A stretch of 64,000 nt of DNA from assembly GCA_037379345.1 (NCBI GenBank), contig CM074515.1, positions 22,320,001 through 22,384,000 on the forward strand, written 5' to 3'. The translations under genes were made by a program, and so were the position numbers. The notes under the pieces were generated by a model. That model searched no databases. It had not been told where the DNA came from and saw only the letters and a list, made by a program, of their open reading frames with translations. The DNA is from Perna viridis. Lineage: Eukaryota. Of the stretch, positions 667-50,995 are shown piece by piece; within the stretch, counting starts at the first letter, position 1; each line of letters starts with the position of its first letter.

Positions 667-876
667 CTGGGTCTTTTGCTTGATGAGCCAGTTTTCTAAG
701 AGCTGCTGCAAAGCTTGAGGTTCTGGTGGCATTCAGAGCAGCATTAGAACTAATTGAGGTCAAACCATTGCTTGGTGAGGTCTGGTTTAAAGGTGGCACT
801 GTGGCAGTATTCCTAGAAAGTTTGGAGGAACCTCCTAGCATGTTCAGTGGTGGAGGCTTGACATTCTGGCCTGATC
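667..876 (-). CDS. GSE1: GSE1 homologue, shared coding exon: GSGQNVKPPPLNMLGG...TSSFAAALRKLAHQAKDP
   Basis: Polypyrimidine acceptor tttttttctttcAG (878-877), donor G|GTAGGA (666), 210 nt, phase 1-1. Contains the GSE1 hallmark SSFAAALRKLAxQA. Confidence 0.92.
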
Positions 877-2364
877 CTGAAAGAAAAAAAATGAGCAAAT
901 TTTATTAGTTAAATCAACTAATGTAATATAACCTTCATTACACTAACTTTGAGTGCTGTATATTAAACCACAACTTCCCACAAAATCAGTACCTCACACA
1001 TAAAGATATGTATTAAACTACTATTGATGTAAATTTACAAGTACATGTATAAATGGTTATCGCAACTTAATCTCTCTTGTACATGTACAACAAAGTGCAT
1101 CTTGTTAATGGTTACTTCATACAACACATCCTGAAAAGGTCAAGTAGTTTACAAGTACCATGGATTTCCCATAGAAGTCTTAATCACTTTTCTAAGAGGA
1201 CAAGATTCTAGATTTGTTGATAGCTAGGAGTTTCCTTATTTGACAATCCACACCAACACTTAACTGTACTGATTACACAACTTACTGATTAAAGATTGGT
1301 TTATAAACAACAGCTTTGGTCATAGTGTCAATTACTTTTCATAGAAAACAATAATTCTTGTTTTTTTTTTTGTCCCACATCTTATCAAGAGTTCTGTTTG
1401 TCTGAACCTTCATGTAAATCAGAAGAAATAAATGAAGAGGTTACAGGAAGTCAGTATGTTTAGTCTACATCACTATTCATTTCATTATAATGAAAACTCT
1501 CTTGTCAATGCTTCCTTCTATGATTTCCCATCTTATCATTCATTGCTTAAGAATTAAGTGCAAATTATTGTAAGAATCAGGCAAAATAGGACAAATCAGG
1601 AACAAGTCAAAACCCCACCAATCTGACAATACAATTTCACTCATGGATGCTTCCTCTATTTGAAAAGACAAACATTTAATTTCTGTATCACTGGATTTGC
1701 ACAGAACTATTAGAAAAAAATCAGGTTTATGACAGATTTATCTGCTTTGAAATGTTTGTTTTCAGTGCATTTAAATGAAACTATAACTCAATTTACCAAA
1801 AAGATATGGAAGATCTTATCTTGATTCTGATGGTCCCATAGGTCAAATGGTGGTTTTTTCGTACCATGTTTCACCAACCGCCTGATTCTTACAGTGACTG
1901 ACACTTAGTTAAATTTGAAGGTTCATGAAAAATGTTGGTTTTTCTAGATCTATTTCTAAAATGCCTTTAATATTATCAGTATGTGTCACCATAAAAATAT
2001 CCACCCATATAATTTAAAATTCCATTATAATACACACTGCAAATTAAATGTATGTTCAACACAATGGAAAATTAAAACATTAAAATTTTAAAAAGATTAT
2101 AAAAACACCTAAATTGCTGTCATTGCACACGATCAAAAGTTTGAGCATTAAATTTTAAACTGGGATAAAATCCTGATGAGTTTAGCAACCTGACTGTGAC
2201 AGGGCTAATAAGGCTATCATTACTGCTGTCTTATTAATAATTCATAACACTATAAAAATTCATCAATATAAATCATGTCTAAAAAGTTGACTCAATGAAA
2301 GGATGGGTCCTTATCATAAACAATAAAACATAAATAATCAATAAAATGTCACCAATAATGCTTC

Positions 2365-2541
2365 TACAATGAAACCTATCTAAAGTGAACTCCTTTTGAA
2401 CTTTAAAATTGGCTCAGTTTAGACAGGTGCTTCATTAACAAAGGCTCAGAATATATTTAAAATGATATAAAAGAACTTTTTTAAAATATCTGGTTTAGAC
2501 AGGTCTCAAAAATTTTTCAATTCAAACAGGTTTTTCTGTAC
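2365..2541. mobile_element. TA-flanked MITE with GTTTAGACAGG subrepeats; related arrays at about 2995-3130 and 31480-31615
   Basis: TACAATGAAACCTATCTAAA...ACAGGTTTTTCTGTA ends; repeated GGTTTAGACAGG units. Confidence 0.5.
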
Positions 2542-3559
2542 TACACTATTTTCAAAAAAATAACTGTAGACAGCACTTCCAGAGCATACTTGAAATAGAT
2601 AGAACTATAGCAAATAGATAGGGTAAAAAAAAACATTCCATTGATTTTTATAAAAACTGGATGTTTTTAATAAAACTTAAACTTCTACAAGAAGTAGAGT
2701 TACCTGTCAGATCAAAATTAATTAAAAGCAAACCAAGAAGAAATCATTGTATTATTGATTGCTAATGACAATCTGTTCTATGCAGTAACTATACCCTAAT
2801 AGAATCAATTAACTAAAACTACAGGAAAACATGGATTAATGTTTCTTTATTTAGTGCTTTAATTCCCTACTGGTACTTCTTATTCATGAATTGCAAAAAA
2901 TTGTCATGGTATTAAAGAAAAATGCCAGGATGACATTTAAAATATGTGCACAATCAATGATGCATGAACTTAACACCTTTGAGACATAAGAATTTGTCCA
3001 GTTTAGACAGGTGTTCGGTTTATACAGGTTTAAATTGTATAGATATCTAAAAATAAGTTGTGTCATTTTGGTTAAGACAGGTTTCTGGTTTATTCAGGGT
3101 TGTTTCAGACAGATTTTACTATACAACAGGTGTAAAATTTTGATGTTTCAGTCAAAACTGTTGTAGAACAGTACACATTTGACACTATGACAGTGCATGG
3201 AATCTGCCCCTCAGACCTCTGTCTCTTGTATATGAATATAATATTTGACCTGTCTGGCCATATCTTTAAAAATAAATCAAAATATAGTTGTTTACATCCT
3301 TTTGCATATTTATAAAGATATAATGAAATTACATGAAATAGGGATATGGCAAGATTAAAATTTTGAAAATAGACCATTTCCCAGTGACAGGCCGAGTTGC
3401 AATAGATCGTTCTTCGAATCCTTTGTTAATATTTCTGATTTTTAAAAGACATTTTCCTCTTATATTGTATATTAATACGGAACTTGATTCCCTCTCATTC
3501 CAATCTATGGACAATAACTAAAGAGCTTCTTCCAATATAGCTGTCATTATACAACATAA

Positions 3560-3746
3560 TGTGAAAGCATCATTCTTCGTGGTATTCTAATTTTTGGGCT
3601 TGACAAACCACAGATATGTATTCCAGAATAAAAAAAATTGGAAATTTTCCATTTGTTTGTATCCTGTAGTTGACAACTCCACAAATTCCCAAATTTACAA
3701 TCTGACATTTCTTCCCTAAAATACAAATAAAAGTACTTTCACAATA
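3560..3746. mobile_element. MITE family C, degenerate
   Basis: TGTGAAAGCAT...AGTACTTTCACAATA ends. Confidence 0.5.
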
Positions 3747-6700
3747 TACTTAGTGGCATATTTGTTTGATAATTGTATTTTGAGTAGATTTGGTTGGTGC
3801 TTTCAAAGTGGATACAATATCAATACACAGTTTATGAGTATCTCTGGAAAAGAAACTCTATGTAGAGGTTCAATACTAAAATTAAGATTAGCTCAGGGGA
3901 GGAAACTTATAAGTTAAACACAGAGCTCAGATTTTGGGGAAACTCTATAAGTAATATTATTCAGGGGAGAAAACTCCTCATGTAAGCATGACAGGTTAGA
4001 ACAAAATAGATCAAATGAAAAAATAATCAAATACTAGGTGCAAACTGAACTTCTTAACATTGAAGCTTTAACCTTAAGGCACTTCAGTTTTTTTTTCTTT
4101 TTCCAATTTAATCAACAGCTGTTGCCTGAAAAGTACATCTACAGAGTACTCATTAGTAAACCTGTTTATGTTGTTTTATATCATAACATGCTGCAAACAT
4201 CATTTTAACGATTTTCACAGAACTTCACCACTTATATCATACACCTACCACTTCTAATCTTTCATAATCTACTACTACATCTCAAGGCAAAGTGCACCAG
4301 ATATAATCAAACGTTTCTTGTTATATGAAATACATGTATTAAAATCTTTTTTAATTATTTTTTATTAAATTATATTTGTGTTTTCCTTCAATATTCTGAA
4401 GATCAGAGTTTTTCTTCATTTACAATCACATTTTGTAAGTATGTTGGATTGGGTCCACAACCAATGTGTCCACATGAACAATTTGGCCCATGGCAAGGTT
4501 ACAAATAATTTGATCTTCCTATGAACACCTGTATTGGCAGTGTGTAGTGGCATCCCTTACATCTCCCTGGAAATCCTAAATACAACACTAGTATCATATT
4601 CAAGTTTACAGTCTAATCAATAATCAGAAGATTTGTGGAAGGAAACTGTTGTATTTTTAAAGACAGAACAAACATGTTATGCACTAACAAAAAGAAACTG
4701 ACATGTTTTATACCTGAAAAGCATTAAATCTTTAAGAGGTTTAGAAAAATAAGTGACGACTTTTAAAATAGCAAGTAATCAAACTTACAAAATGTCAGAA
4801 ACATCATTCCATGACATGCATCTAAAAACAGGGGAAAACGCTACTCACTGAATGAGAACATTATCTTTTCCTCCAAGGAGAAATTATTACTTGTTATTGA
4901 ACAGAAACTGAAACAAGCTTCATTTAAATCTCTTCCATATCAGTGTTGTGTTATAAAATGAATGCTCCCAAATGAATCTCACATGCTTAGGGAGATTATA
5001 TTACTGGCACAAGTCAGGGAGGCTGTTACTTCAGGTTCATGGAAAACTTATCACTTTAACGCAGGCTGCACATAATACCTGTGGTTACATAACTTGATCT
5101 CAACTCAATTTCAATCAAGGAAAGTGTTTATCAACAAAATATAATTAATCACAGACCATGCTGTATTCCTGGGGTTCAGAACAGGTGCTTTTAATAACTG
5201 TGGATAAAATTACACAATGAATATCATCTTACTGTCAAATATCAAGGTCACTCAGGTCAATGTATGTTATTATTTTCTACATAATCTATACCAGATTAAA
5301 AATCTTCCAACCTAAGTTTTGGCAATCAATTACTATTTTAATAAGATGAATAAAACATAATATTGACACCTGAAATCTGCCCTAATATAGAGAAAAGCCA
5401 ACAAATAAAGAGTCACAAAAACCAATTTAAAAAGCACATGTTCTTTATTCATTTTTAATGGAATTTTTTTCGGAGTAATGAACATTGACCTTGCTAACAG
5501 AAAATGTTGGCAACCTTCTTTCCATCAAGTCAATTCATGGGAAATTGAGAAATAATTAAACATATGCAAAAAGAAAACAAAAGAAAAATATAAGAACAAT
5601 CAACGGAAATGCAAAAATTCATCACAATGGGGGAATATCTCCTTTATAAGACAATGTCAATAGTCTTGTCTTTACATTACAGATGAAAGCATGTGCAATC
5701 ATATCTTTAAAGCCCTGCATAAAACCAGAGAGTAAACACAATGAAGTAGACAGCAAATACATGACAGAAAAGAAGAGCTTTTTACCAGAAAAGACAGTTT
5801 CGGTCATTAAAAACAAGAATAAAATCAATTCACTGACTCCATGTTGTGTTTATTTATCAGTGGCATGTACCATTGAATCCAATATCTCAACAAGAAGTTA
5901 TCCAACTAACTTTACACCTAAGAGGTTCCTCTACAGTTAACTGTTATTTCATCATTATTTTCATGGTTACTAGAAATGTGAATAAATAAGACACATTTTT
6001 AAAAAAAAATTGACTCACAAGCTAAGAATTTAAGTAGCTTTTGATTTTTTTCCCTCGGACCACATGTGCTAAGATGAATGAACCCATTGTATACTACACC
6101 TTCAGAGACTCCATAACAGTCAACACTCCCTAAGTGACCCCACTAAAGAAACCTTATGCATGTTCTATCACTTCCTACTGCTACCAACTAAAATTCCAAT
6201 TATGGATCCTTTTGTTGGCTAACAAATTGACAAAGCAGTCTAATATTTGATTTCCAGGCATGATACATTAATCACAAGTCAGTGGTTCACTGGAGATAAC
6301 TGGGGATAAATTAGGCTATAATCAGTGAGCTCTTTATTGGAGAAAAATTGATTTTATATTGTAAGGTTTCAAGTAATCTTAGAGGAGCCATGTAATAACC
6401 TGATAAACCAGTCTTTTTTGTGAACTGTTGATTAAATTTGATGGAAAACAGAAGCATTTATAATTAAATTGGCAATAGTGGTGCTTCTTATCTCTTCAGT
6501 AATTAGACGCATCATTTTTAAGCACAATTTACTGATACAGACAAACCATGTTTTCATATCATGTGCAATTGCATGTCATAACTAATAATGTAATGTTTAT
6601 CAATAACCTATCTGAAATATCTGCAGCCATCACTCAGCCAATAGGTACAAATGATGCAGCATGCAGCTTAATAGGTCATTACCCACTGCAATAAGGAGGT

Positions 6701-9700
6701 TTGAAATTTCTACCACTTAGTAAAATAGAGGAATTTATTGCTAATCACAGACACCCCTGCATTCTACATTTTGAAAAAAAAACTGAACACACTTATTTTC
6801 TTAAAACCTATCAACAGAAAATGCAAAAAACACCATAACTGAATGTAGAAGTTTTGTGGTAAGTTTAACCAGAAAATCTCTGAGTGTTTAAGAATACTCC
6901 CTACCCAACAGACCATATGGTCAAAATATAAACAGAATGTCATTTCAGTCTAAAATCAAATTCCACCATGTGGCAAACTTACATGTATAAAAAGCATTTG
7001 TTAAAATATCAAATGGCTGTGATAGGTAGTAGCAGAGAAAAATCACAAAAAAAAATGTGGACATACACAGAGACCAAACCTAAGAATGAACTGACGGACA
7101 GACACCATGGCCACTATATACCTCCCGAAAAGCCTGGGGTGTAACAAAAAATATGCTAGGTGGTGCCAACAGTGAAATGGATTGACGAACTGATAAAAAG
7201 GAAGTTATAATAATATATTTGTACAGTTGCATGTCCTCGTCAACTACTAACCCCTAGAAAGCTGTTAATTAATGCTCTTATACAGCTATTACTACCTGCT
7301 ACACTGCATAATATTCCTTCAAAAAGAGCTGTTTGAGAACAAAAGCATCCACTAAAATGTACAGGTTAAAAAGAAAGTATAAGAAATATGCTGGGACAAT
7401 AGTATACTTGAAAGTGATTAGCTGTGCGGATGCAGATGTCTTCAGAATTATGGCATTATAAAAATCCTCAGAACAGATCCAATAAATATATTTCTTCTGA
7501 CATAGGAGCATCTCCAGTTGCACAACTGTCACTTGAAATAATTCATCAAAAATACATACATGCATACTATTGTATTTTTATGGAGGAAGCTGTATTAATA
7601 TCACTCAATCTCATAGACTCTCACAGATTACATAACTCAACAAGTAGGTCAGGGGTAAATTTTCCCCTAATTACATTTGACACGACCCCCATCATACAAA
7701 TGAATTCTAATGAGTATATATCCCATCAAAAAGTGTGAATCATTCCCATAATAATGTGTCATTTTTTAACTAATAACACAATTATAAACCATCTGCTCAA
7801 CTCAATAACCATGAAATGAATGTCTAACTTGGTTAAAATTGCCAATTATTTCAAATTATACCATAAAATGTTTAGATTTTCCACAAGATGTTTGTGTTTT
7901 TGTCTTAATTTCTGCTGGTCCATTTGTGGTCTATATTTGGTCTAGTGGATTAAAGTGATATAATTCTTAATTTACTGATCAATGCTATGATTCTTCACAA
8001 GAAATAAATGCATCTCTTTTTCTTGGTTTGATGTCTTATCAACATCAAAATGGATCTACATAGAATTATGTCTGCTATATTTGATTAATTTAGAGATTTT
8101 TCACAAGATGTTTGGTATTTTCCTCAGTTTTGGAAGGACTGTTTGTCATCATTCTGTACCACAATAGATCTGAATCAATTCATTTCTATGATACAAATCT
8201 CCTCAACTTCAAAGCAATTATTCAATTAATGTCCCATTTTGCCCCATTTGGAACAGCACCATGTCCAATAATGTGAGAATAATATTGGTTAATGTAATTG
8301 ATGTCTGAGGAAACATGTTGAAGATACTATCATAATGTTCATTTTCAATCTGAGAGGGACTACTGTTGACACACTTCATTGTTTCCATAATGAATAGAAA
8401 AAAACCACAATCACACATGATCAGTCCAATGACCTGTATCAGTTGGTGGATCAAGGAAGATGGTCTAAAATTTAGTTCATTATAGAAAACCACCACCACT
8501 GATCCTTAACAATCTGCCATATAGTTACCACAACTTCATAGCATTGGAAATTCTTCTACTTGAAAAAAAATGCAAGCAAAAAGAAGTGAGTTCCCTATGA
8601 AAAAAATTGACAAATAAGGAACTACATCTTTTAATTGGAAATAAATTTATAATAGATATTAAATCAACTAGAAAACCATAAAAATTCTACATCAACTGAA
8701 TACTACAAAATAAAAAATCAATAACTAAATAAGCTACCACGGTTTTTGCTTTGATGTTACCTTTTTTCTAAACTACATATGCGGTAGCAGCATTGTAAGC
8801 ATCAATGCAGCAGCTTGCAACCAAGATACAATAACTGTTGAATAGATAAAATTCCCTTATTCAGTCACGATATATATACCTTACCTTTCTATCAAACAGT
8901 CAAATCAAGTATCAAAACAAGATCCTCTCACAAATACATCACACAATAATGACCAAATATTATGCTAAAACCTTTTAACCAAACACAAATTTGTCTTCAT
9001 TGAAGAGCTTTTAAAGCAGTCATCATAGCAAGTAATTTGTGAATTTGCCTTTAACAGGATAAAATTAACCAGCTTACCCCTTTAGTAAACAAATGCTTCA
9101 TCAATATTGGTAAAAGCCGTCACCATAACCCTTGTACATGGTCACTAGTGTGATACAGCTCTATATCTTCTATTGACAATGAAATAAATCTATGTCCAAT
9201 AATCATACAGCTAAACCTAATAACAATGTTGTAATATTTACAAAGAGTCCTATAGAATTTGTTAAGTATCAGTGTTCTGCCTCGGGTTGTAAAGATCGGA
9301 TCAACGGGAAAATGAATAACCCAAGCCAAACAATGATAAAACCAGGTGAATCTTACACCATGTTTATTGACAAAAGTATTCAAAACCTGATTTAGGTAAA
9401 ATTATACACTTAAGGTACAGTTTTAAAATCCATAATCGGTTATGAGATGTTGAGAAGTTATTGTATTGTATTCAAGGGAAAACACAAAGTAGACAAAGAC
9501 TTATGTTTATTTCAATGCACATTCTTCCTTCAAAGATGGATTTTTGATCCCCTTATGATAGAAATCTTAACTTTTTTTCACTCAGATGCAGTTAAAACAT
9601 GAAAACTGCAGCGATAAAAATCTTGTAAAAAAATAACCTTCAATTCATGTAATTTGCTTAAATACTTGGCTGTCTTGTAATCATGCAAACAGCTAGGATT

Positions 9701-10224
9701 TTATCAAGCAAAATAAAAATATCATTTTGATAATTCAAAATAATACAGGGTGTCTAAGAATCTTAATCAATGCAAATTAAAGTCAGATTTAACAGATTAA
9801 AAGATACAAGACTCCACCTTGTAAACATGCAGTGCATGTGCAATACAGACTGCAAATTTTTCAAGATATGATATACATCCTGCAAATAGTGCATTTTGTT
9901 ATTCAAATAATCAAAAAGATAGTGCACTTTTTCAACAACAAGAACCTGTGTATTTCTTATTAAAGAATTCGTAAAGCCATCAAAAAATGAATTGTAGATC
10001 AGAGATCAAGTCAAAATGGAAATATCAAGCTTATAAAGCAAACCCTGGCAGCTGAAAAATGAACAATTGTAGAGTCTTTCAGAGTTTACTGATAATAACA
10101 TAGAAACTGACAAAAGATGGTAATAGTCTGGTCTGACATTATAGATACAGAAAGTTGATTGTCAGAAATTGACATGAAAGATCATAAGTCCAATTAAGAC
10201 CAAGTATGTTCTAGCTCCTACTGA

Positions 10225-10290
10225 CAAAAAAAAAAAAAATACAAAAAAATACAAAAAATACAAAAACAAAAAAACAAAAACAAAAAAACA
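10225..10290. repeat. A-rich simple repeat (poly-A / CAAAAAA(T)A units)
   Basis: Directly visible. Confidence 0.85.
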
Positions 10291-25587: not shown

Positions 25588-25696
25588 CAGGAAATGGAAA
25601 AAGGGTCGGAGGGGGCAATGCCCCTGAATACTGTGACATCAAATATGCCTCCATCCTATCCATCAGATGTGGGTAAGCTCCTTTATTAAGCGACAT
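25588..25696 (-). CDS. GSE1: GSE1 alternative first coding exon (short isoform): MSLNKGAYPHLMDRMEAYLMSQYSGALPPPTLFPFP-G
   Basis: ATG at 25696, 36 open codons plus 1 nt, consensus donor CTG|GTAAGT at 25587. Phase 1 joins exon 667-876 in frame. No good upstream acceptor; CpG-richer patch upstream. Confidence 0.7.
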
Positions 25697-25899
25697 TTTC
25701 TCTCTGTATTGATCCTAGTGTTATATTAATGAGATAATCACTTTTCCCCTGTTTAACAGACAACTGACTTGTTTCACTGTATCATGATGGATCAATGGTA
25801 ACTCCACCACAATATTAATATCCAGTCATCTTTATCAAACCATTCAATTGCCTTCTTTAGCTTGCCACAAATTCCACTTCTCCTTCCTCAACCCCTCTC

Positions 25900-30015: not shown

Positions 30016-32127
30016 GATTTGATCAGTCATCCAAGTCATATCATGAAATTAAACAATGACCATTAAATTGGAGATGTATAGATTGGTATCCTTATTACTC
30101 AGAACTAGTAGTGGACATATCAATGTAAGCTAAGTGTGAGGCTCTGTAATGACTATTTTTAAGTGAACCAAGAATTAGGTGGTGTTTATCCTTGATTTCA
30201 AGGATAATTCAAATGATATTTTGAATAAACCAAAGCAAATCTTGAAAAGCTTATTTCAACTTCACTTTTTATCTGTATTTTATTTTCTGGAAAATTAGTT
30301 ACAAGTCTACTTATCTGCTTTCAAATCACTTTTTATAGTGGATAAATAAAGAATTATTTTGTCATTTATTCCATCTTTAAGCCCATGTTATACAAATATA
30401 AAGCTTTGAATTACGACCAGAAAATCATTTATGGAATTATAGAGTTATCAAACATGCTAACTGTTGGATAAACAAACCTTGGCAAATCAATGAAAATTCT
30501 AAACCATTTATCATCAATTCATCATTACGACTAATTTCCAGACCCCCAACTCTTTAGAGACCAGAAATGAAATTGAGTTTTTAAATCAGTCTTGTCATAA
30601 TAGGTTTTCCATTTAATTCTATCAGCAATCCAATTGCAACACGAGTCATTTTCACCTATAACTTCCCTCAAACAAGCTTATTCACAGTCTAACGGCATTA
30701 ATATCCGCAATGTTCAATAATTAGTGATGTGCCTAATGAAGAAAGAAACAAGCACTTGTGATGTTCAAATTTCCCAGCAAGTGGCTGCTTATTGATAATT
30801 TTTAAAGCTTTACAGGTTCAGGTGCCATGTTGCCATGGCAACCAAATAAAGCATTTAAATGTTGCAGCTAGTTTCATTTGGAGATGCTTATATGTGTTGT
30901 TAAAAAAACCCAGGCATGACTAAAAGTCATTAGCTGCTGTTTAACCAGCTTAAATCATTTCATGATCAAAAGTTGAAGTCTTAGAAGATGGAACAATATA
31001 AGAAATTGAATCAATCAATGAATAATTACAACAGGCTAAATGCCATAGGTCTTGTCGTTTATCCATTGTGCACTAACTGAAAACTTTTAACCAGTATCAG
31101 ACAGTGGTATTATGTGACGACATGATCATCAATTAAGTTAAGAGGGAACAATTGCAAAGGGAAATATTCCATTGATTTTTACAAAGATAAGCAGAGTTAG
31201 AAAACATCAGAACAGTTTAATTTTTAAAGTTCAATTGGCTCTAAGGTATGCACATATTGTATACTATTTCTTCTGTAAAAGCATTAGTTTGATTAGAACA
31301 CCAAACTGTCAATGGAAAGACCAAATCCGGACAACTAATCTAGGTTGACCACCGACACCAGCAACAATGGGAAGAATACAGCACTTCAATGTTTGCAAAA
31401 CAAACCATCAAAATGGCAATTAATAAAATCATCAGCATACTCCACAAAAATCTGAATTTTTTCCAAACTTGGATGAACTGAAACTGATTAAACCAGACAT
31501 CTTATAAAGTTCATTTATATCAATTATCTGTTTTGAATCTGTGTAAACCAAAAACCTGCATTAACTGAACAAGACTTTGTACAAAAAGGAACCAGCTTAG
31601 ACTGGTTTCAATGTACTGGTATCTTCTTTCTTTCAAAACAATTTAAATACCTGTATGCAGACCAGCAATTCATAGCTTACATTCAATTCACGTGACCCTA
31701 CTTACATGTAGCTTAGAAACAAAAATTAATGATGTTTTTTTTTCTATATTTGATAGATGTACATTTCAATCATAATTCTCTATATCATTTCCTCAATCAT
31801 AAACTGCGGACCTTCTAATCATGATCGCCTTGTCAATCAAATTTCCAATGTTATAATGCATGTCTATGTCTCTTTAACAACCACCTACATCTGGCTGTCT
31901 CCATAAATTTCACAAAGCAAAAAATATACAGCTTTTAACAGAAATGTCAAGGGAAAAATGCAATTACATTTGTACAGTAATATTTGACGTAAAATACATA
32001 CTTCTTACACAACTGGATATGTAAAATCATGCACAATGTCCTTTTATCAATTTAAATAATTATTATACAACAAAAATATCATTAATTTATTATTCAATGC
32101 TACCCAAGTTTATTTGTAGATGTCTGT

Positions 32128-32329
32128 ATAGTGTGAAAGTATTATTGTTTGTGGGGTACCAATTTTCAGGTAGGTCAAACCACAAAATTTGGTTTCCCAC
32201 AAAAAGGACACTTCCATTAGTGTGTATACTAAACACCTTAAAACCATGAATTAAAGAATCCACAAACATGTGTTTCTTGCCTAATCCACAAAAATTTGGT
32301 ATCCACAAATTAAAGTACTTCCACAGTAT
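32128..32329. mobile_element. MITE family C
   Basis: TAGTGTGAAAGTATT..TTTGTGGGGTACCAATTTT ... AAAATTTGGTATCCACAAATTAAAGTACTTCCACAGTA inverted ends. Confidence 0.65.
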
Positions 32330-32699
32330 ATGGAATATCAGTTTGCACCAACAACTGTTTTAGACAAAATACAATTTTACAATTTTTTTTTATAGGACAA
32401 TCATATATTTATGTAACAAATTTTTAGTTGGTCTGAATGAACTTTTTCTATAGCCTTGAATATCAAATAAGAAGCTACATGTCTAAAACATACAAATTCA
32501 TTTCTAAAACTTTACACAAAAGTTCAAAATTAATAGGTTTTATACAAAATATAGCCAGGCCAAGACAAAACAGAATAGATTGGTAGTTACTAGGTAAAAT
32601 AACTTTTTTTAATTTTAAAATTTATCTTATAGATACTTCTTGGAGAATTTCTCGACTTAAAAATTTAAAAAGATGACAGTTAAGCCGCATTTCATAAAA

Positions 32700-33258
32700 A
32701 TACCAATAAAATGTGCTAGGCATACTCCAACTAGTACAGGAAGTTGATACCGGACAGCAACCAAAATCACTTACAACATATGCCCCATCCATAAAACGCT
32801 ACACATCAAATTTGAAATCAATCCATCTATTGGGAGCCAATATTTTAGTGACAAAAATTTTCTCTATCATTTCATATAGTGCAAAGTGGCAAAGTCTCAG
32901 GAAGTTGACAACAGACAACACCCACAGCAGCTAATAATATATGCCCCATCTATATAAAGCTACACAACAAATTGGAAATCAATCCATTTATTGGGAGCCA
33001 AGATTTGTGATGAAAATATTTTCATATAATTATCATTTTATATAGTGATAAGTGGCTAATTCCTACAAAACAGGAAGTTGATATCAGACAGGTCCTAAAA
33101 TGACTTATAATGTATGCCCCATCTATATGAAGCCATATACCAAATTTATAATCAGTCCATCCATTGGGAGTCAAAATAATTGTGTCTAAATATGGACAGA
33201 CTGACGGAATGACTAGGTGATTCCAATATACCACCAATTTGTTGAAATGGGGTATAAC
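32700..33258 (+). mobile_element. Helentron/HINE-like non-autonomous element with internal ~160-170-bp repeats; similar 3' ends near 7145 and 19900
   Basis: Three degenerate repeats (ATGCCCCATC.AT..AA.C.A.A...CAAATT), a GACA/GACG-like tract, and a terminal ATACC...GGGGTATAA hairpin. Confidence 0.5.
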
Positions 33259-35212
33259 AAACAAGTTTTTTTTTTCTCTGGCCAAAAGTCTATGCTCATT
33301 TCCAACATCATTTTCCTTTTTTCCAGCATCATCTACACAATGTACATGTACAAAATATCTAGCATAAAAAGTTAAAAAGTTTAGTACTATGTAATTTAAA
33401 GGCTTAAAACATTAAGATTTTTAAAAATTCGAAGAAAAAGACTAACTTCCAGCTCAATTATTTCTATAAAGATTGAGATAGATAACTCAAAAAAAGGCAA
33501 AAAAAGAAATGAGGTTCAGTGAGGAGATGAGAAGTATAAGAAGAATCTAAGTTATTTACATGGATAACTTGTGTTTTATAATCGAATATTATTAAAAAGA
33601 AAAGCAAATATACAACTACTATCCTTTTAAAATTTGAGCAATAAAAATGGAAATATGTAGCTGTGACATTGTAAAGCTACCCATCACATAAGGAGAGGTT
33701 TTGTTCCTAGGGTCAATCGGGTTATACTTCAGTGTATTTATAGCTAATCCATGCATTAAATGTCTGGTGTATCATTCATTTCACTGAGCACTTCAGAGAA
33801 AAAAACAGGCTTCTCAAAACAGCAGTAAAAATCAATTCTTTTATGAGTGTTTTAGGGATATTAAAATTGTACATTAAAGGCTACAATTCCCAATCGCTGA
33901 ACCATGTGTTATAAATTATTATTTATCATTCAGAGTTGATCAAAACATATCTTAATTTTATTTTCCCAGGAGAGAAAATGTAAATGACAAGTTTCATAAA
34001 GCAATCATTTATTGATCAATGCTATGCTTTATGGCTAATTTAATTGCTCAACCTTGATGAGATTAAAAATCCCTACATTATCTGAGCAGTTTTTCTCCCT
34101 TTTCACGACCCATCAATTAATAAACTTGCATGATAAAACAGCCTCAATTCTCAACAAATCATTACAATTATTTACTATTAGGAGTATATTCTCTAACTTG
34201 AGGCAAAGTTTGTTTGGATATTTGAGCATTAAATCACTATGTTTACTGGATAATAAGTAAATATGCTTGACAATGCAATCAGCTTTTGTTATGGTATTGA
34301 ATTCTCTACTGAATATCTATAATATTGAGCAACATGAAGTGCGAGAAATCTTTTGTTGTCTCGGCTATTTGATAATATTTAGATAGAAAACTACTAGGTT
34401 AAAATAAATCAATATTATAATAGAACTGTGGGTAATTATTTGCAAATAATGTGTTACAGCCTTTGAAGAAAATTTACAGCCACTTCTTCTGTGTAATTAA
34501 GGCATGCTGAGGGTCAAGGGTTAATCATGTGTCTAGTAGAAAGTGATAGGGGTCAAAGTGTTGGTAAAACTTGACATCCATCTCTTCTTCAGTAGAACCA
34601 CAATGTTTATCAAATTTACTGGAAAAGGGAGTCTGGTGTCAAACAGGAAATCAATGGGTGTAAGGGAGACAACTTATAAGCAAACAATTTTGAAACAGTT
34701 CAGGCCTCATAGAGACTGTTTCCCCAAACCCTCTTTTTCTATTTAAACTTGTTTTAATTTTTTTAATCTTTTATACAAAAACAAGGTGTAACATATTTCA
34801 AATATAATACAATGGAATTTTTCCTTTCCTTTTTTGAACTCTTTAACCATTTTACTAAAAGATTTTTTATCCTTATGAACCATGATTTTTTTTTCTAAAA
34901 TATTATAACACGTAGGAATCAAGGCTCCATTTGAAAAGTTGTTAAATCCCCAGAAAAGGCTTATTTCTTCAAAAGAATAAGTAAATGAAGTACACCTATT
35001 ACACTGACACACACTACTGCTCAAGACAACCTATCCTGTTCATAGAAGATATAAATAAGTTGTCTTATGGTCTTGCTGTCCTAACCTACAAAAATCAGAT
35101 CCCCCTCCCTTTCCTGGTGTCTATAAATGACAGTATATAATGCCAACAATGAGGATGACAGTGCTGTACAATAGAGAAAAACCAATATTGTGGTTGAATA
35201 AAAAAGCTTTCA

Positions 35213-35424
35213 GGAAGTTGACCTATGGTAAGGGAAACAACTCTTACAAATCAATGGAACGTTTGTATTCAGTATTTGACATCAATTTTATGTAAGTATC
35301 AAAGTAACTTGAATTGATTTCATTCTGTTTCAAATGAAAGCTTGATAGGCTTTGGTGAAATTGAATATGATACAAACATATCACTGATTTCAAGAGTTAT
35401 GTCCCTTAGCCTAGGTTTACCTCC
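35213..35424 (-). mobile_element. Family A MITE
   Basis: Reverse-orientation copy with degenerate GGA.GT.GACCT...AGGT.TACCTCC termini and the conserved core. Confidence 0.8.
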
Positions 35425-36040
35425 TGAGGACTTATGTGTATTCATGCACTGTGATACAGTCATGCACAATTATGATACACATATCAGATTTAGTACATTA
35501 AGTACATTTTTAATCAACTAATAACAAAAATTATTCCCATCCTAATTGACTGATAGTAATAGTCGAATCAGTCAATATATTTTCCCAATAGAACAGTCTA
35601 CTGCCCAGGTAAGACAAATGGAGTAAATATATAGTGACAAACATGTACAGATGTCTACATAAAATTGAAAACTCATGATTAAATCATATATGATAGTGGC
35701 GGTTCCAGGAATTCTGACCCCCTCCCAATTTTGTTGAAATACATTGTTAATTTTGTGCAAAATCTACGAAAATGAGCAAATAATAGCCTAGAACCCCTAT
35801 ACAAAATCTTTCAACCCATTTCTGAATGAACCTTCCTCCATATCACTGTCAATAAGGGGCAATTTTTCATGTCTAATATAACCCATGCCTAATGAATGTA
35901 GAATTATCACTTGTCAAAATATAGTATACTGTCTAGTCCAATAAAAAATTGCCAATAATCAAATCCATTAAATATTTCAGTAATCATTATCACTATATAC
36001 ATATATATCAAGTCCTATTTAGTAAAGACACGACCTGTCA

Positions 36041-36554
36041 ATAGGGTTTGTAAGTCTTGTAACTGGTCTCATCAGAATGGGTCCTAGTCTACCATTCAAT
36101 TGCATGGAGTTTTGTCATTTTCGTAGCATTTGGTTCAGAATATAAAAGCAAAACGTATTTTCATTATAAAAATACCAATAAATATGATAATAGTTACTTC
36201 CACATGATAAAAGTGTTAAGAAAAAGCATAAAATAGAACATTTTGCATTGTAATACAGCATTTTAAGATCCCTGAAGTTAACAATAAAATGCAGACTGGT
36301 TTTAGGTTAAATGTGTTCAATATAAAAGCAAAACATATTTTCATATAAAAATACCATTAAAAATGATAAATATTTACTTCCACATGATAAAAGTTTTATG
36401 AAAAAGCATTAAATAGAACATTTTGCATTGTAATACAGCATTTCAAGATCCCTGAAGTAAACAATAAAATGCAGACGGGTTTTAAGTTAAATATGTTCTA
36501 CCTTAGAATTTCTGGTAAGAAAAATGAAACTAGAAAAAGACTTACAGACCCTAT
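36041..36554 (+). mobile_element. MITE family B with an internal 180-bp tandem duplication
   Basis: TIRs ATAGGGTTTGTAAGTCTT / AAGACTTACAGACCCTAT. Units 36139-36318 and 36319-36498. Homologous to 62830-63171. Confidence 0.75.
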
Positions 36555-38341
36555 AGATTTACTGAACTAAGGGGGGTAACAAATACAAAGCAGTTGGAGT
36601 CAACATTGTACCAAAGGAGGCAACTCCAGCATATACAAGAGGATTTTTTTCAAATTCCAACTATTTCTTTTTCTTTTTTGGGTTAACGTTCTTTGCTATG
36701 TTTGAACATAAGTTAAGGTTCCATAAATTGACCAAAAATTTAGAAAATTTAATTTAAAAGAGTAACTTACTAGTAGACACTACCATACATAATTTTGATA
36801 AAAGATGTAATATAAACAATAACATGCCCTAAGTTAACTATAAGAATAGACTTCCCATGCCATAAATTTAAACCTTAAAGTTAACTATTGGAATGATCTT
36901 CCTTTAATTGTTCTGAAAGTATCATAAGTAGGGGGAACTCTTTCAGTTTAGAAACAATAGTGCGAGTTACACATTATAAAAGTGCTTACCAATGAAAGTG
37001 CGTACTGCCAAAAAAGTTTCTTATTTCAACAGGTTACAGTTAATATTTGTCATATATGTCCACAATACAAGGTACCAATAGGTTATACGTACATGCAGAT
37101 AATCACTGTACTAGCTGAAGAACACTGAACTTATATTTTGTTTTTCCCCCCCAAATTTTGATAATATGACCATGACCTTTTGTACTGATAACAGGAGACC
37201 ACAATACAAAAAAAGAAATCAGAAGTATAAAATGGATAAAATGTAGGTTCAGATATCAGTTTCAGGTCTGCATCTTTATGAAATTTCCAGTTTTCTTAAG
37301 AATACTTCAATGCTAAAATAATGATTTAAACCTGATCCACTGACAATGTACAGTTATATCATAATTATGCTACATGACAAAGTATTTTTTTCTACACCGT
37401 TATTTAAGAATTAGTACGGAGTGATATGTTTGCATTTCATTCAATCAAGAAATATAGAGAACACACACTGAACAACTTACATTTTGTTGTGTGTTGTGAT
37501 GACACAAACACATTTTTGATCAAATATATGCTGATTTTTTTATCATCTTATTCAGCACAATAGATGCATTAGCTACAGTAAACAAGTAATGTAGACTTTA
37601 ACAATAATATAGTGCAGTTATCACACTTTCTTGGCAAGCTTAATTGATTGTGGGGCTGAATTTGTTATCCATGAACACTTCAATTTGACTGAAGAGATTT
37701 TCACAAAATCTAGACAGACTGTATTATTGACATGCTCAAATTACATGTAAAATGTAAAAAGGGCAAGGTAGGGTATAATTGTAACACCCAACTATTTTAA
37801 ATAGGACAGCAGTTCGTTTATTCATAATTTCAATTGCAATCACAACTTACCTGTCTCAACATGTACTACTTATAACTGGTTCTGTGAATCTACATGAATT
37901 ACCTTTTATACACCTGGCTTTTTCATCACATACCTGTTACTAATACTGTCTCTGAAGTCTACTCTCAACTTTGACATGTCAAAAGCTACACTACTGCTAA
38001 CACATATTTTAAATTCTAAGTGACAGCAGTGGAGTAGAACAGACTATCAGTCTGTCAAGTAATTAGGAATAACTATTTCAAAACATAAAAGATTGGCAAG
38101 AATAACCTGTTGGGGAAAAATGTATCCCTGCTTTAGACAATATCCCTAAAAAGAATTACACAATGCAATAAGATGTTTAAAGCACATTTTTTTTGCTAAC
38201 TTTCAATAAACATGTACACATGTATAATAGGTCAAATTCATATGGTTTCGTAGTATAATTTATTTTTTGCATGTTTCAAACACTGGGACAAAATAAAGAG
38301 TAAAACTGAGAAATCAGAATTAAAATGACCTTTAAATGTAC

Positions 38342-38411
38342 CTGAAGTTTCATCTGTAGCTTCTAGCTTGGTTATCTCCCTTGGCATCTGTTCTTTAACT
38401 TGACAAATTTC
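38342..38411 (-). CDS. GSE1: GSE1 long-isoform exon 2: EICQVKEQMPREITKLEATDETS-G
   Basis: Acceptor ttattttctgcAG (38413-38412), donor TCAG|GTACAT (38341). 70 nt, phase 0 to 1, which is what is needed to link exon 39615-41744 to exon 667-876. Confidence 0.72.
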
Positions 38412-39388
38412 CTGCAGAAAATAAATTTGTTTATTGATGCTGAGTAAAATATCTTCCCTTAAAAAAATATTTCTCATCAATTTTGTACATATAAGCATAT
38501 GTTTAAAACAATTTTACATCACCATACAATCTTAGAAGGGCCAAGGGATGAAAAGATGCCATGCCTAGCTGGCAACATCCAAACATTTTTATAACAGGCT
38601 GATTGCACTAGGGTATAGTGAAAGAGAACTAGTATGTGTTTTGAGCGAGTTTTTAATCTATTTTTTCACAAAGAGAAAACATGCTTTTTAATCTATTTTT
38701 TGTACAAATTTGTAAACGTAGTTTAATTCAAGGCATCATGAACTATTGAAAATTTTTAAGATACAAATATACACATACATTTCACTCAGCATGCATTTGT
38801 GGAACTACACAATGGAGTCAACATTTGAAAACACATGATGTCTTAAACTCTTTATACATTTTTGTACATGTACAATTACATGTAGCTTTCTTTTTTAACA
38901 AACTATGACTTATAACAAGATTTCGATTACATTGTATGTATTGGGAAAGGAATTATAAAATAAGTATGATTGAAACAATTTTATACAAGTTTTATTTTTT
39001 GGAGCAAGTACAATGAATGTTATGATTTCAAATGGTTTTATGCCATTAATGACATATGTTGCACATTTTCTCGTCTGATACTCTCTAGCACATTTTAGTA
39101 TAAAATAATTTTCTATACTATACTTAATATTAAAACAACTTTTTTTCTTAAGAGATATAAGATATACATGTTTTTGTCAAACTGACTCATTAAAGAACAA
39201 AACAAATGATGTCAGGTGCTTTTGAAAAATCACAATTTTAGGACACCTCAACTAAACATGAATATATCATTTTATGGCAAAATCTTACAGTTTGTAATGT
39301 CTTAACATATGAAATTTATTGCAATACATGTATTAAGTTACAATGTAACTGATAATCACTACGGAATTCGTGGTCTCTAGCAGTTTAA

Positions 39389-39589
39389 GGAGGTAGACCT
39401 ACATGTAGGGGAAAGGTCATAACTCTTGAAATCAATATGTTTGTATCATATCCAATTTCATCCAAGCTTATCAAGCTCTCATTTGAAACAGAGTGAAATC
39501 TGTCCAAGTTACTTTGCTTCTTACATGAGATTGACGTAAAATGTTCAATGATTTGTACAAGTGGTGTCCCTTACCCTAGGTCTACCTCC
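39389..39589 (+). mobile_element. Kolobok-type MITE (family A), complete copy
   Basis: TTAA|GGAGGTAGACCT...AGGTCTACCTCC|TTAA. TTAA TSD with purine termini fits Kolobok rather than piggyBac. Confidence 0.8.
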
Positions 39590-39614
39590 TTAAGGAAAAT
39601 TTTTATAATGATAC

Positions 39615-41744
39615 CTCTTCATCACTACTATCATCATTTTGAGCCTGCAGCTCTTTTTGTTTGGTCCAGTTGAATTTTCTAAGCTCTACAGGAACACCCA
39701 TTCTTTCATATTCAATATTCTGCATGTTCAAGTTCTGAGCACACATAGTGCATACCCCTACAGTCAATCCATCTTCTATGGTTGGTGCAGTATTTGGTTT
39801 GATGTCTTTCAGAAAGGGGTACATTTTACAGCTCAGTAGCTGGATATTTTTGTGCTTCATCCACTTGGAACATAAACAGCACACGAAGTCAGGTAAGGTA
39901 TATTTACGGAGCCATCTATTAGAGTCATTACCACCTTTGTTCTCTTCATAGTCATTCCACTGCTGAATCAAAATATGAAAACAAACATCACAAGAAATGA
40001 CAGTCCCATCTTCTGTCATAGTTTCAGCTTTTGGTGCAGGTTCCTTGTTAGCCAGAAAGGGGAAAAATGGAATCACCTGATTGTTCATAGTTTTGGCCTC
40101 ATGGCGAGGTGGATAAGAGCACAAGACATGGGCTTTGGATAGTCTGCATTTTTCCCCACATAAGAAACAAATTTTCTTAGGAATCTTTGTTGCTTGAAGC
40201 AATGGATGTGGAACAGTTTTAGCAAACGAATCTACTGATGGACTCTTGTTCACTTTAACAGGTGATTTTGACTTCGGTGGTTCATTTCCATCACCCTGAT
40301 TTGTAGAACCAGAAGATGCAATTGCCAGAAGACCTTGTGAGGCCAAAAGGGTATCTGCCTGCTCAGAAGAATTCTCAGAAATTTGAATATTCAAAGGCTT
40401 GTTTAAATCTGGTTTTGGTGATTCTCTTCCCTTAAGAATTGGCTCATCTTTCAATTGCTTTAGCCGAAAAGAGCTATCAAGTAAATCTGGTTTGTTTCCA
40501 AGAAAAGACAAGGAATACTGTCTTTGTGCTAATGGTACTCTTTCCATCTCTTGCAACTGCCACTGCTTGTATAAAGCTTCATAACAATTTCTACATGCAA
40601 GTACAGATCCATCAGACCTTAAAGGCTCGGCTCCTGCTGGTCTACTTAATTCCCTGACAAATGGGAAGAATAAAGTTCCCATTGATGGTTCAGTTGAAGG
40701 GGATGTGAATAATGACCTGATTAATTCAGCAGGATACATATTGCCACAAATGTAACAAACATGCTCTAAACGTGCTTGTGAGAGTTCAACTGAATGCATT
40801 CTAGTAAGAGAAGCAGCATTTGCTCGTATTATTTTCAATTCTTGACTTTCAAAGACCTTGTAATTTCTATGCTGGTTGGGAATACCTGACATTTCATATG
40901 CTTGCCACTGTTGAAACAAAGAGTTTTTACAAGCAACACAAACTCTTGTCTGCCCATTATCATTCAGAGGTAAAGCACCAGGAATACATGGAATTGTTTG
41001 AATAATTGGGAAATAAGGCTCACTGATTGACTGCCGAACTGAATTAACAACTTTACTATCATAAAGACTGATTTGATTTGCACATAAGAAACATAGAAGT
41101 ATTTGTTTCTTATCATCAGTTGCAGTATTACTAGTGTCACTTTTCTTTGTCACAGATAAATCTAAGACACCCTCACTAGGCACAGGTTTTTGTGTAACTA
41201 CCTGACTTCTATTTTCTGAACTATACAAAGGCACATTTGTAGGTATACTAGCAACAGTTTTAGGTTGTACAGCTGTGCTGCTAAACTGAACGTTCTTTTT
41301 TTCTCTAGCAATGTCAGCAGATTTCCTATCAACACGGACTTGCTGAGGAACCTCTCTAAGTCCTCTTTCTCGTCCAAAGTCAGATGGAGATGTTCTGCCA
41401 TCAAATGCTCCAGGCTGATATTGCAGACCCATTATTTGAGCAATATATTCTCCCTGCAATCTCATCTCAGCTCCTGTAAAATGTCCATTGTCTGCCCTCT
41501 TCAACCAATACAGTCTTTTGATTGCTGGAGTATGTGACCTTTCATAAGCTTCCCACTGCTGACAAAGAAAGGCACTGCAGACCCTACAGCTGTCTACAAT
41601 GCCCTCTTTTGAAGGTAGACGAGATCCTTTGGGAGGGTCATGGTGCTCTAAGAATGGAAAATAAGGTTCACTGTCACAGGCTTTTATTCGCAGTCTGTGT
41701 TCTGCCCCTTGACTTCCACACACAAAGCAGATTATTCGAGCCAT
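39615..41744 (-). CDS. GSE1: Large first coding exon (710 codons) with five Cys4 repeats (CxxC-x~20-[YF]FP[FI]-x~22-CxxC-xxxLxxQWxxYE); probable N-terminal extension of the GSE1 long isoform (Plexus-like)
   Basis: 713-aa ORF, the only long ORF in the window. Repeats start at Cys 6, 218, 330, 526 and 622. Phase-0 donor GAG|GTATCA at 39614, three codons before the stop. Same strand as and upstream of the GSE1 exons; linkage inferred from phases. Confidence 0.8.
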
Positions 41745-50889: not shown

Positions 50890-50995
50890 GTATGTATCGA
50901 TGAAAGACGAATATGGTCGTTCGTGACATACCTGCTTTACCTATTTCAAAATATAGAATGGCCATATATAAAACAACTATGTTTTCTTTTCAAAG

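What the first reader, a model, noticed from the sequence alone, without database searches (positions are those of the whole stretch)
667..41744. A five-repeat Cys4 (Plexus/ZAD-like) module appears to be spliced onto GSE1 across a 37.5-kb intron
Seen: a phase-0 donor 3 codons before the stop of the 713-aa ORF, a 70-nt phase 0-to-1 exon at 38342-38411, and a phase-1 acceptor on the GSE1 exon at 876, giving one open frame. Known: GSE1 is described as a Pro-rich/coiled-coil subunit of the LSD1-CoREST-HDAC complex, and its canonical form has no zinc-binding domain. Inference: a long isoform adds ~730 aa of putative Zn-binding repeats that resemble, from memory, the cysteine-rich motifs of Drosophila Plexus. 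That would suggest Plexus-type repeats and GSE1 belong to one ancestral gene that annotation may split. Poorly characterised long GSE1 transcripts may already be annotated in vertebrates, so novelty must be checked.
Basis: partly seen in the sequence, partly recalled or inferred. Interest (0 to 1): 0.8.

Follow-up and report, generated by a model that had tools for sequence, protein, structure and literature searches.

The report
Bivalve GSE1/Plexus gene with zinc-module exon
The 713-codon reading frame is the large first coding exon of this bivalve's GSE1 gene, the counterpart of fly Plexus; its five zinc-type modules are real, but the same long form is already annotated from molluscs to mammals, so the locus is ordinary and the module itself is unstudied.

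Summary
These are a 713-aa minus-strand ORF (41744-39603) with five CxxC...FFPF...CxxC...QWxxYE modules, and a GT donor after 39615, three codons before the stop. There is also an AG/GT-flanked 70-nt open segment at 38411-38342 and a phase-1 acceptor at 876.

The downstream exons are GSE1. They carry the SSFAAALRKLA motif, and DUF3736 lies 5.2 kb beyond the window start on the same strand.

Predicted proteins of about 1,500-2,300 aa (mostly RefSeq) join the same modules to DUF3736. They occur in scallop, oyster, zebra mussel, brachiopod, annelid, nemertean, priapulid, spiders, insects, amphioxus, sharks, frogs, turtles, birds and several mammals. The scallop protein is collinear with this locus, and its match ends 3 nt before the proposed donor.

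Drosophila Plexus belongs to the same family. It keeps the modules and the SFAAALR/GFQPYR motifs, but Pfam no longer detects its DUF3736.

The 70-nt linking exon is unproven: it is one of 782 frame-compatible candidates, and no RNA data could be obtained.

The module has no Pfam model and no solved relative. AlphaFold2 predicts five confident C4 domains with a treble-clef-like layout, and the likeness to ZAD is weak.

The parts
39615..41744 (-). First coding exon of the GSE1/Plexus orthologue. The start codon is at 41744-41742. It encodes 710 codons holding five C4 modules and disordered linkers, and ends at a phase-0 GT donor (GT at 39614-39613).
   Evidence: The scallop GSE1-like protein aa 4-733 aligns to 41741-39618. 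Orthologues start at the same Met.
41490..41744 (-). Module 1 (aa 1-85), the best conserved. It is followed by the conserved KRLYWLKRxDNGxFTGAEMxxQGEY extension.
   Evidence: AlphaFold2 pLDDT is about 85-97 over aa 1-80.
40845..41108 (-). Module 2 (aa 213-300).
   Evidence: C218, C221, C269, C272 and W280 are invariant in 51 sequences. pLDDT is above 90.
40509..40772 (-). Module 3 (aa 325-412).
   Evidence: C330, C333, C384 and C387 are invariant. pLDDT is mostly above 90.
39909..40184 (-). Module 4 (aa 521-612).
39675..39896 (-). Module 5 (aa 617-690). It abuts module 4 and lacks the QW pair.
39603..39614 (-). Read-through tail (Val-Ser-Leu-stop) that starts with the GT of the donor. It is intronic in the spliced form.
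   Evidence: The equivalent tails in oyster, zebra mussel, snail and brachiopod are unrelated to one another.
38342..38411 (-). Predicted 70-nt linking exon (phase 0 to 1) encoding EICQVKEQMPREITKLEATDETS. It is plausible but not verified.
   Evidence: It is single-copy in the genome. It ranks 13 of 782 frame-compatible candidates. Oyster has a 26-aa acidic linker in the same place.
667..876 (-). GSE1 exon (phase 1 in, phase 1 out) with GQNVKPPPL...SSFAAALRKLAHQAKDP.
   Evidence: It is 81% identical to scallop GSE1-like aa 775-843.
1..161 (-). Next GSE1 exon (Ser/Thr/Pro-rich). It runs on past the window start to about G000:C5:22319977.
   Evidence: It is 76% identical to scallop aa 850-907.

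Best explanation
The window holds the 5' two thirds, by genomic span, of the orthologue of GSE1 (vertebrates) and Plexus (Drosophila) in a bivalve genome.

**Gene structure**
- One 2.13-kb exon encodes an N-terminal array of five independently folding modules of about 75-90 aa.
- Each module has four invariant cysteines. A CxxC knuckle on a beta-hairpin is followed by a short FFPFL helix, and a second CxxC opens a 17-residue helix carrying L..QW..YE. This is the layout of a treble-clef C4 zinc site.
- The exon ends at a GT donor three codons before an in-frame stop.
- It is spliced across about 38.7 kb, most likely through one small exon, onto the exons for the conserved GSE1 body. That body comprises the SSFAAALRKLA motif, a Pro-rich region with RGFQPYRP, an E/R/K-rich coiled coil containing 'QREKE', DUF3736 and a C-terminal coiled coil.

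**Shown here**
- The sequence features and the homology.
- The collinearity with a scallop orthologue.
- The conserved fused architecture across Bilateria.

**Inferred**
- The protein acts, like vertebrate GSE1, as a scaffold subunit of the CoREST/LSD1/HDAC1-2 repressor complex.
- The zinc modules act as interaction surfaces, for protein or nucleic acid, that target or multimerise the complex.
- A shorter module-less form arises from an internal promoter, as in amphioxus.
For: - **GSE1 body downstream:** DUF3736 is on the same strand 5.2 kb downstream. Typical GSE1 exons lie in L008, including 'EEERLRDLEKEQREKEKE' and 'RGFQPYRPGDD'.
- **Relatives:** phmmer found 385 relatives, many of 1,500-2,300 aa. 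Of 24 long ones, 21 carry PF12540.
- **Names of the long relatives:** 'genetic suppressor element 1-like' in Ylistrum, Dreissena, Lingula, Priapulus and Branchiostoma, and 'genetic suppressor element 1' in a shark.
- **Collinearity:** the scallop protein matches the ORF and then 11 downstream exons in order. Its match to the ORF ends at 39618, 3 nt before the donor.
- **Donor position:** in oyster, zebra mussel, a snail and a brachiopod the large exon also ends a few codons before the ORF's stop, and it continues into G..K[PA]PPL in three of the four.
- **Continuous ORFs elsewhere:** Logan contigs of 9.1 and 5.2 kb carry uninterrupted ORFs of 2,257 and 1,472 aa that join modules and DUF3736. 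They look like assembled mRNAs.
- **Vertebrates:** long isoforms have 1-4 modules upstream of SFAAALRKLA.
- **Plexus:**
- **Fold:** five segments have pLDDT above 90 and are separated by disordered linkers. The cysteines are invariant in 51 sequences.
- **Short isoform:** amphioxus isoform X4 starts with 3 aa of its own and then joins the long form at aa 700, after the last module.
- **GSE1 in the HDAC1/CoREST complex:** PMC10681733.
- **px1 allele:** its truncated transcript lacks the Cys-rich and QREKE motifs (PMC13322080).
Against: - There is no RNA evidence for this genome.
- The three Logan contigs of this species run 46 nt past the donor into the intron, so they are unspliced. Their ends coincide with dispersed repeats, so they say nothing either way.
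- The linking exon is not singled out by sequence.
- Zinc binding and CoREST association are inferred, not tested.
- No significant structural or sequence match assigns the module to a known domain family.
Confidence: 0.88

Rival explanations
1. Two separate genes. The 713-aa ORF is translated as a stand-alone protein that ends at its own TAA, and GSE1 is transcribed only from a promoter inside the 37.5-kb interval.
For: - Several annotations model the module alone: Dreissena KAH3773202 (716 aa), Otolemur LOC111725756, Sturnus LOC106852020 and Fukomys H920_06721.
- The only contigs of this species in the collection are unspliced.
- No RNA data were obtained.
Against: - The fused form is annotated in dozens of species from both branches of Bilateria.
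- It also occurs as continuous long ORFs in Logan contigs.
- The read-through tails after the donor are short and unrelated between species, which is typical of intron sequence.
- Zebra mussel has both the split GenBank models and the fused RefSeq model at one locus, so the split there is an annotation artefact.
Confidence: 0.06
2. The fusion is real, but the link is not the 70-nt exon at 38411-38342. One or more other small exons in the interval, with lengths summing to 1 mod 3, are used instead, or alternatively.
For: - There are 782 open AG...GT candidates with a length of 1 mod 3, and 12 score higher on a crude splice measure.
- The donor CAG|GTACAT is only moderate.
- The linker is not conserved in sequence among bivalves, and zebra mussel and the brachiopod splice directly.
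Against: - The acceptor has a good pyrimidine tract.
- The exon lies only 1.2 kb from the large exon.
- It is single-copy.
- It encodes a hydrophilic, acidic peptide of 23 aa. Oyster has a 26-aa acidic linker at the same position, which starts with Glu and ends with Ser before the Gly of the next exon.
- The higher-scoring candidates mostly translate to hydrophobic, low-complexity peptides.
Confidence: 0.35
3. The modules are true members of the ZAD (zf-AD) family and work as ZADs do, by head-to-tail homodimerisation.
For: - The predicted order of elements is the same: a CxxC knuckle, a beta-hairpin, a short helix, and a second CxxC at the start of a long C-terminal helix.
- Five ZAD entries appear among the top 50 of 48,161 chains and cover model residues 1-73. 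They are Serendipity-delta, ZNF276, CG2712, Grauzone and M1BP.
- Grauzone and CG2712 ZADs also appear in the Foldseek lists.
Against: - All these matches are in the noise: Z 2.3-2.7, Foldseek E of about 1-2 and TM 0.41-0.43.
- Other treble-clef zinc domains score the same or better, including the TK1 lasso, FYVE, GATA, nuclear-receptor DBD and HNH.
- Pfam zf-AD hits neither the ORF nor any of 51 relatives at E<=10.
- A profile of the five modules finds no PDB sequence.
- ZADs are single N-terminal domains in front of C2H2 arrays, and there is no C2H2 array here.
Confidence: 0.12

Closest known systems
Long predicted isoforms of GSE1 ('genetic suppressor element 1-like'), e.g. Ylistrum balloti XP_060080641.1 (1,865 aa), Dreissena polymorpha XP_052233715.1, Branchiostoma lanceolatum XP_066289963.1, Mustelus asterias XP_078066705.1
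   Same: - The architecture is the same: an N-terminal array of C4 modules, SSFAAALRKLA, a Pro-rich region, a coiled coil, DUF3736 and a C-terminal coiled coil.
- Scallop has the same five modules.
- The scallop protein is 48% identical over the large exon and 69-81% identical over the next exons, and collinear with the locus.
   Different: - Only species-level differences were found. Linker sequences differ, and the link after the large exon is direct in zebra mussel and the brachiopod.
- The number of modules varies: 5 in amphioxus, priapulid and a beetle, 7 in a spider, and 1-4 detected in vertebrates.
Drosophila Plexus (px), the nuclear-matrix protein that represses wing-vein formation (Matakatsu et al. 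1999, as cited in PMC8864742 and PMC13322080)
   Same: - The C4 modules are homologous (E=5e-52 to the D. ficusphila orthologue).
- The SFAAALR.LAKQA and GFQPYR motifs and an E/R-rich coiled coil are shared.
- The 'QREKE' motif named for Px occurs literally in the downstream exon here.
   Different: - The Drosophila proteins give no Pfam DUF3736 match even at E<=1, whereas bee, beetle and planthopper px orthologues do.
- The fly proteins have long low-complexity insertions.
- A 2021 paper lists px as having no human orthologue (PMC8864742). The chain of homologues found here contradicts that.
Canonical vertebrate GSE1 (KIAA0182), subunit of the HDAC1/CoREST/LSD1 complex (PMC10681733)
   Same: The body of the protein from SSFAAALRKLA to the C-terminus, including DUF3736.
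   Different: - The studied form lacks the N-terminal zinc modules. The statement that the canonical human form has none rests on general knowledge and was not checked here, and no human sequence was fetched.
- Here the modules are the first 710 codons.
ZAD (zinc-finger-associated domain, Pfam zf-AD)
   Same: - It has four cysteines in two CxxC pairs.
- The predicted order of secondary-structure elements is similar.
- The size is similar.
   Different: - No sequence-profile match was found.
- The structural scores are insignificant.
- Here the modules form a tandem array of five inside a co-repressor scaffold, not a single domain ahead of C2H2 fingers.

Membership tests
GSE1 / Plexus orthologous group | DUF3736 (PF12540, 'genetic suppressor element-like domain') in the same gene | tested here: met
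   A match of 52.3 bits (cut-off 22.6) lies at G000:C5:22314529-22314783 on the minus strand, and its second half at 22313796-22313981. This is 5.2-6.2 kb downstream of the window start on the same strand. It is collinear with scallop aa 1493-1643.
GSE1 / Plexus orthologous group | Conserved N-terminal body motifs SSFAAALRKLA.QA and RGFQPYRP, and an E/R/K-rich coiled coil | tested here: met
   SSFAAALRKLAHQAKDP is in exon 876-667. RGFQPYRPGDD and EEERLRDLEKEQREKEKE are in L008 ORFs. These positions are nearly invariant in 24 long orthologues.
GSE1 / Plexus orthologous group | N-terminal array of CxxC...FFPF...CxxC...QWxxYE modules on the same polypeptide | tested here: inconclusive
   The modules are present. 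They are homologous to those of fused proteins in more than 40 species. The splice sites and reading frame allow the join. No transcript of this species was seen.
GSE1 / Plexus orthologous group | Association with the CoREST/LSD1/HDAC1-2 complex | not testable with these tools
   This is known for human GSE1 (PMC10681733). It is inferred here by orthology only.
ZAD (Pfam zf-AD, PF07776) | Match to the family profile | tested here: not met
   There was no zf-AD hit for the ORF at E<=1, or for any of 51 relatives at E<=10. HMMER's filters drop most matches above E of about 0.1.
ZAD (Pfam zf-AD, PF07776) | ZAD fold (treble-clef C4 with a long C-terminal helix) | tested here: inconclusive
   Five ZAD entries score Z 2.3-2.7 over model residues 1-73, and Foldseek gives E 1-2 and TM 0.41-0.43. 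These are no better than other treble-clef domains and lie within the noise range stated by the tool.
ZAD (Pfam zf-AD, PF07776) | Single N-terminal domain followed by a C2H2 zinc-finger array | tested here: not met
   There are five tandem modules. No C2H2 family was found in the ORF or in the long orthologues.

The most novel reading that the evidence does not exclude
The CxxC...FFPF...CxxC...QWxxYE module may be an undescribed, bilaterian-wide zinc-binding domain family that forms the ancestral N-terminal half of GSE1, mammals included.
- It has no Pfam model and no solved relative.
- No paper in the held library links GSE1 with Plexus or mentions DUF3736.

On this reading, the GSE1 studied in CoREST biochemistry is only the short isoform. 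The long isoform would use the modules to target or multimerise CoREST/LSD1/HDAC. The Drosophila vein repressor Plexus would then be the fly's GSE1 and would act through CoREST.
Probability: 0.3. Interest if true: 0.55.

Novelty: already known. Interest (0 to 1): 0.27.

Why it matters
For this genome the result is a routine annotation point. The 713-aa ORF and the GSE1 exons 38 kb away should be modelled as one gene, and split models in other genomes are probably artefacts.

The wider value is a reminder of something that sits in the databases but was not found in the searchable literature.
- GSE1 has an ancient, conserved N-terminal array of zinc-type modules of unknown function.
- Drosophila plexus is its orthologue, although a 2021 paper lists px as having no human counterpart.
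- This links a classical wing-vein repressor to the CoREST/LSD1/HDAC complex, and it points to an unstudied long GSE1 isoform in vertebrates.

Tried and rejected
- **RNA evidence.** Before and after that I only used protein-level tools and own-genome searches on this stretch.
- **Logan contigs as transcript evidence.** The contigs of this species (L011-L013) are collinear with 42568-39569. Both ends fall at dispersed repeats, so they are uninformative.
- **Domain libraries.** Pfam on the ORF and on 51 relatives found no family for the module. PDB sequence searches with the ORF and with a five-module profile found nothing. The ESM Atlas feature search on module 1 gave no usable hit.
- **Fold searches.** The whole model and the module-1 model gave no significant match.
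- **Literature.**
  - No paper joins GSE1 with the fly gene plexus; the word-start hits were GEO accession numbers.
  - DUF3736 occurs in no paper of the library, and CG4444 in one unrelated paper.
  - Matakatsu 1999 is not held.
- **More coding exons in the interval.** Relaxed tblastn of 11 orthologues against the 37.5-kb interval found none.
- **Upstream ORFs.** Pfam found nothing for six ORFs between 43 and 55 kb.
- **Alignment.** A first alignment of 84 sequences failed internally, so a smaller set was used.
- **Joined model.** The spliced model was examined exon by exon only.
- **Human sequence.** None was fetched or compared.


Full report
**1. What is in the sequence**

- The window is G000:C5:22320001-22384000 of a 723-Mb, AT-rich genome.
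- The best protein matches are to bivalves: ark shell 52% identity, scallop 51%, oyster 50%.
- On the minus strand, 41744-39603 is a 713-aa ORF, the only ORF of 150 aa or more in that part of the window.
- A motif search finds ten CxxC pairs arranged as five modules, at aa 6/53, 218/269, 330/384, 526/585 and 622/665. [YF]FP[FI] lies between the pairs in four modules, and QWxx[YQ]E follows the second pair in four.
- Aligned to one another, the modules share C, C, P, G, C, C, L, Q and E in all five copies (A4).
  - The donor is GAG|GTATCATTATAA, with 39615 as the last exon base.
  - The mini exon has ttttctgcAG|GAAATT at 38411 and TTCAG|GTACAT after 38342. It is 70 nt: 23 open codons plus 1 nt.
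  - The acceptor is tttcAG|GA at 876, and the exon ends at 667 before GTAGGA.
- Read exon by exon, the phases fit (0, then 0 to 1, then 1).
- A direct 39615>876 join would run into a stop, so an intervening exon with a length of 1 mod 3 is needed.

**2. The downstream exons are GSE1**

- Exon 876-667 encodes ...KPPPLNMLGG...NATRTSSFAAALRKLAHQAKDP.
- DUF3736 (PF12540) scores 52.3 bits, above its cut-off of 22.6, on the same strand 5.2 kb beyond the window start. Its second half follows 0.6 kb further on.
- The 10 kb below the window hold ORF pieces with RGFQPYRPGDD, MERYRMMQPQ... and EEERLRDLEKEQREKEKE.

**3. The module array and GSE1 are one gene in other animals**

- Pfam left the ORF open, so I ran the exhaustive phmmer search. 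It gave 385 relatives, 134 of them at E<=1e-30, and many of 1,500-2,300 aa.
- Of 24 long relatives, 21 carry DUF3736.
- Their consensus runs modules, then SSFAAALRKLAKQA, RGFQPYRP, a coiled coil, DUF3736 and a C-terminal coiled coil.
- Names from the sources:

| Name given | Species |
|---|---|
| 'genetic suppressor element 1-like' | Ylistrum balloti, Dreissena polymorpha, Lingula anatina, Priapulus caudatus, Branchiostoma lanceolatum |
| 'genetic suppressor element 1' | the shark Mustelus asterias |
| unnamed or 'uncharacterized' models | Owenia, Tubulanus, Parasteatoda, Centruroides, Limulus, Agrilus, Nilaparvata |

- A word search with the shark N-terminus lists long GSE1 isoforms in many vertebrates: other sharks and rays, coelacanth, teleosts, many frogs, caecilians, turtles, birds, a wallaby, pika, a whale, rodents and an anteater.
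- Those I inspected have one to four modules upstream of SFAAALRKLA.
- The scallop protein is collinear with this locus. Its aa 4-733 match 41741-39618, aa 775-843 match 871-668 (81% identity), and aa 850-907 match 147 to beyond the window start. Nine more exons then follow in order over the next 9 kb. The first match stops 3 nt short of the proposed donor.
- I compared stand-alone ORF translations with the fused models of the same species. The large exon ends a few codons before the ORF's stop in oyster, zebra mussel, a land snail and a brachiopod. The read-through tails are unrelated to one another.
- Oyster then has a 26-aa acidic linker before G..KPPPL, while zebra mussel and the brachiopod splice directly.
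- Two Logan contigs, of 9.1 kb and 5.2 kb, carry uninterrupted ORFs of 2,257 and 1,472 aa with both parts. They have leaders of about 500 nt, as assembled mRNAs would.

**4. Plexus**

- The ORF matches a Drosophila ficusphila protein of 1,940 aa at E=5e-52.
- That protein's relatives are named 'protein px', 'Plexus' or 'MAP7 domain-containing protein plexus'. The bee, wasp, beetle and planthopper members carry PF12540.
- The Drosophila proteins themselves give no Pfam hit at all, even at E<=1.
- They do retain SFAAALRTLAKQAD, GFQPYR and an E/R-rich coiled coil, aligned with the bee protein.
- This probably explains why a 2021 paper lists plexus with human orthologue 'None' (PMC8864742).
[quoted passage not shown] 'QREKE' occurs literally in the coiled-coil exon here.
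- No paper in the library connects GSE1 with the fly gene, and none mentions DUF3736.
- The main GSE1/CoREST paper does not mention a zinc domain in GSE1 or any GSE1 isoforms.

**5. The module**

- AlphaFold2 on the whole ORF with 51 sequences gives five confident segments: about aa 1-85, 210-300, 325-415, 520-615 and 618-690. Most 10-residue blocks there have pLDDT above 90, and the linkers fall below 50.
- Each module has a hairpin with the first CxxC, a short helix at FFPFL, and a strand leading into the second CxxC, which opens a helix of 16-17 residues.
- The eight cysteines of modules 2 and 3 are invariant, and the other cysteines are at least 90% conserved, in 51 sequences.
- Module 1 has a conserved extension, KRLYWLKRxDNGxFTGAEMxxQGEY.
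- Modelled alone, module 1 has mean pLDDT 82.8 and pTM 0.71.
- No structural match is significant. The best VIA Z is 4.2 and the best Foldseek E is about 0.1-1.
- The lists are dominated by treble-clef zinc domains: the TK1 lasso, FYVE, GATA, nuclear-receptor DBD, HNH and ribosomal zinc proteins.
- Five ZAD entries score Z 2.3-2.7 and cover residues 1-73. That is a lead, not a test.
- Pfam zf-AD does not hit, and a profile of the five modules finds no PDB sequence.
- I therefore call the module a treble-clef-like C4 module of its own, uncurated family.

**6. What remains open here**

- No RNA data were obtained.
- The three Logan contigs of this species are collinear with 42568-39569. They end at dispersed repeats: an element with inverted ends at about 39384-39594, and another repeat at about 42540-42678. 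They say nothing about transcripts.
- The 70-nt exon is one of 782 frame-compatible candidates and ranks 13th by a crude score.
  - In its favour are its nearness to the large exon, its pyrimidine tract, its single-copy status, and its acidic 23-aa product, which resembles the oyster linker in length and composition.
  - I put it at about even odds.
- A short isoform from an internal promoter is likely by analogy with amphioxus isoform X4, which has 3 aa of its own and then joins the long form at aa 700.
- The joined coding sequence was not built or searched.

**7. Verdict**

- The residual interest lies in the module family, for which I found no Pfam model, no solved relative and no paper, and in the Plexus-GSE1 equivalence, which I found only in database annotation.

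Noticed in passing
window 25588-25714 (minus strand; ATG at 25696): A single-copy segment inside the 37.5-kb interval. It is open from an ATG (MSLNKGAYPHLMDRMEAYLMSQYSGALPPPTLFPFP) and ends at a strong CTG|GTAAGT donor in phase 1, which fits the phase-1 acceptor at 876. It could be an alternative first exon for a short, module-less GSE1 isoform, as in amphioxus isoform X4. Its similarity to orthologues is not significant (best E 0.15).
   Followed up: partly
window about 39384-39594: A dispersed repeat of about 210 bp with inverted ends (aaggaggtagacct...aggtctacctcctt) sits 20 nt downstream of the large exon's donor. The first look found more than 2,300 candidate copies in the genome at about 80% identity. 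It is where all three Logan contigs of this species break.
   Followed up: partly
window about 42540-42678: Another dispersed repeat, with about 390 first-look candidates at 81-87% identity, lies 0.8 kb upstream of the start codon. It marks the other end of two of the three Logan contigs.
   Followed up: partly
window about 303-570: The intron between exons 876-667 and 161-1 holds a short interspersed repeat, with about 850 first-look candidates at 70-87% identity across all large contigs.
   Followed up: no
proteins P0089 and P0199 (Drosophila px orthologues): Drosophila Plexus proteins give no Pfam DUF3736 hit, although px orthologues of bees, beetles and planthoppers do. The domain has diverged beyond the Pfam model, or been lost, in the drosophilid lineage.
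   Followed up: partly
window 43095-54939, minus strand: Six ORFs of 116-175 aa upstream of the gene have no Pfam match. The region 42-46 kb has a higher G+C content (0.36-0.39) than the rest of the window, as a promoter region might.
   Followed up: partly
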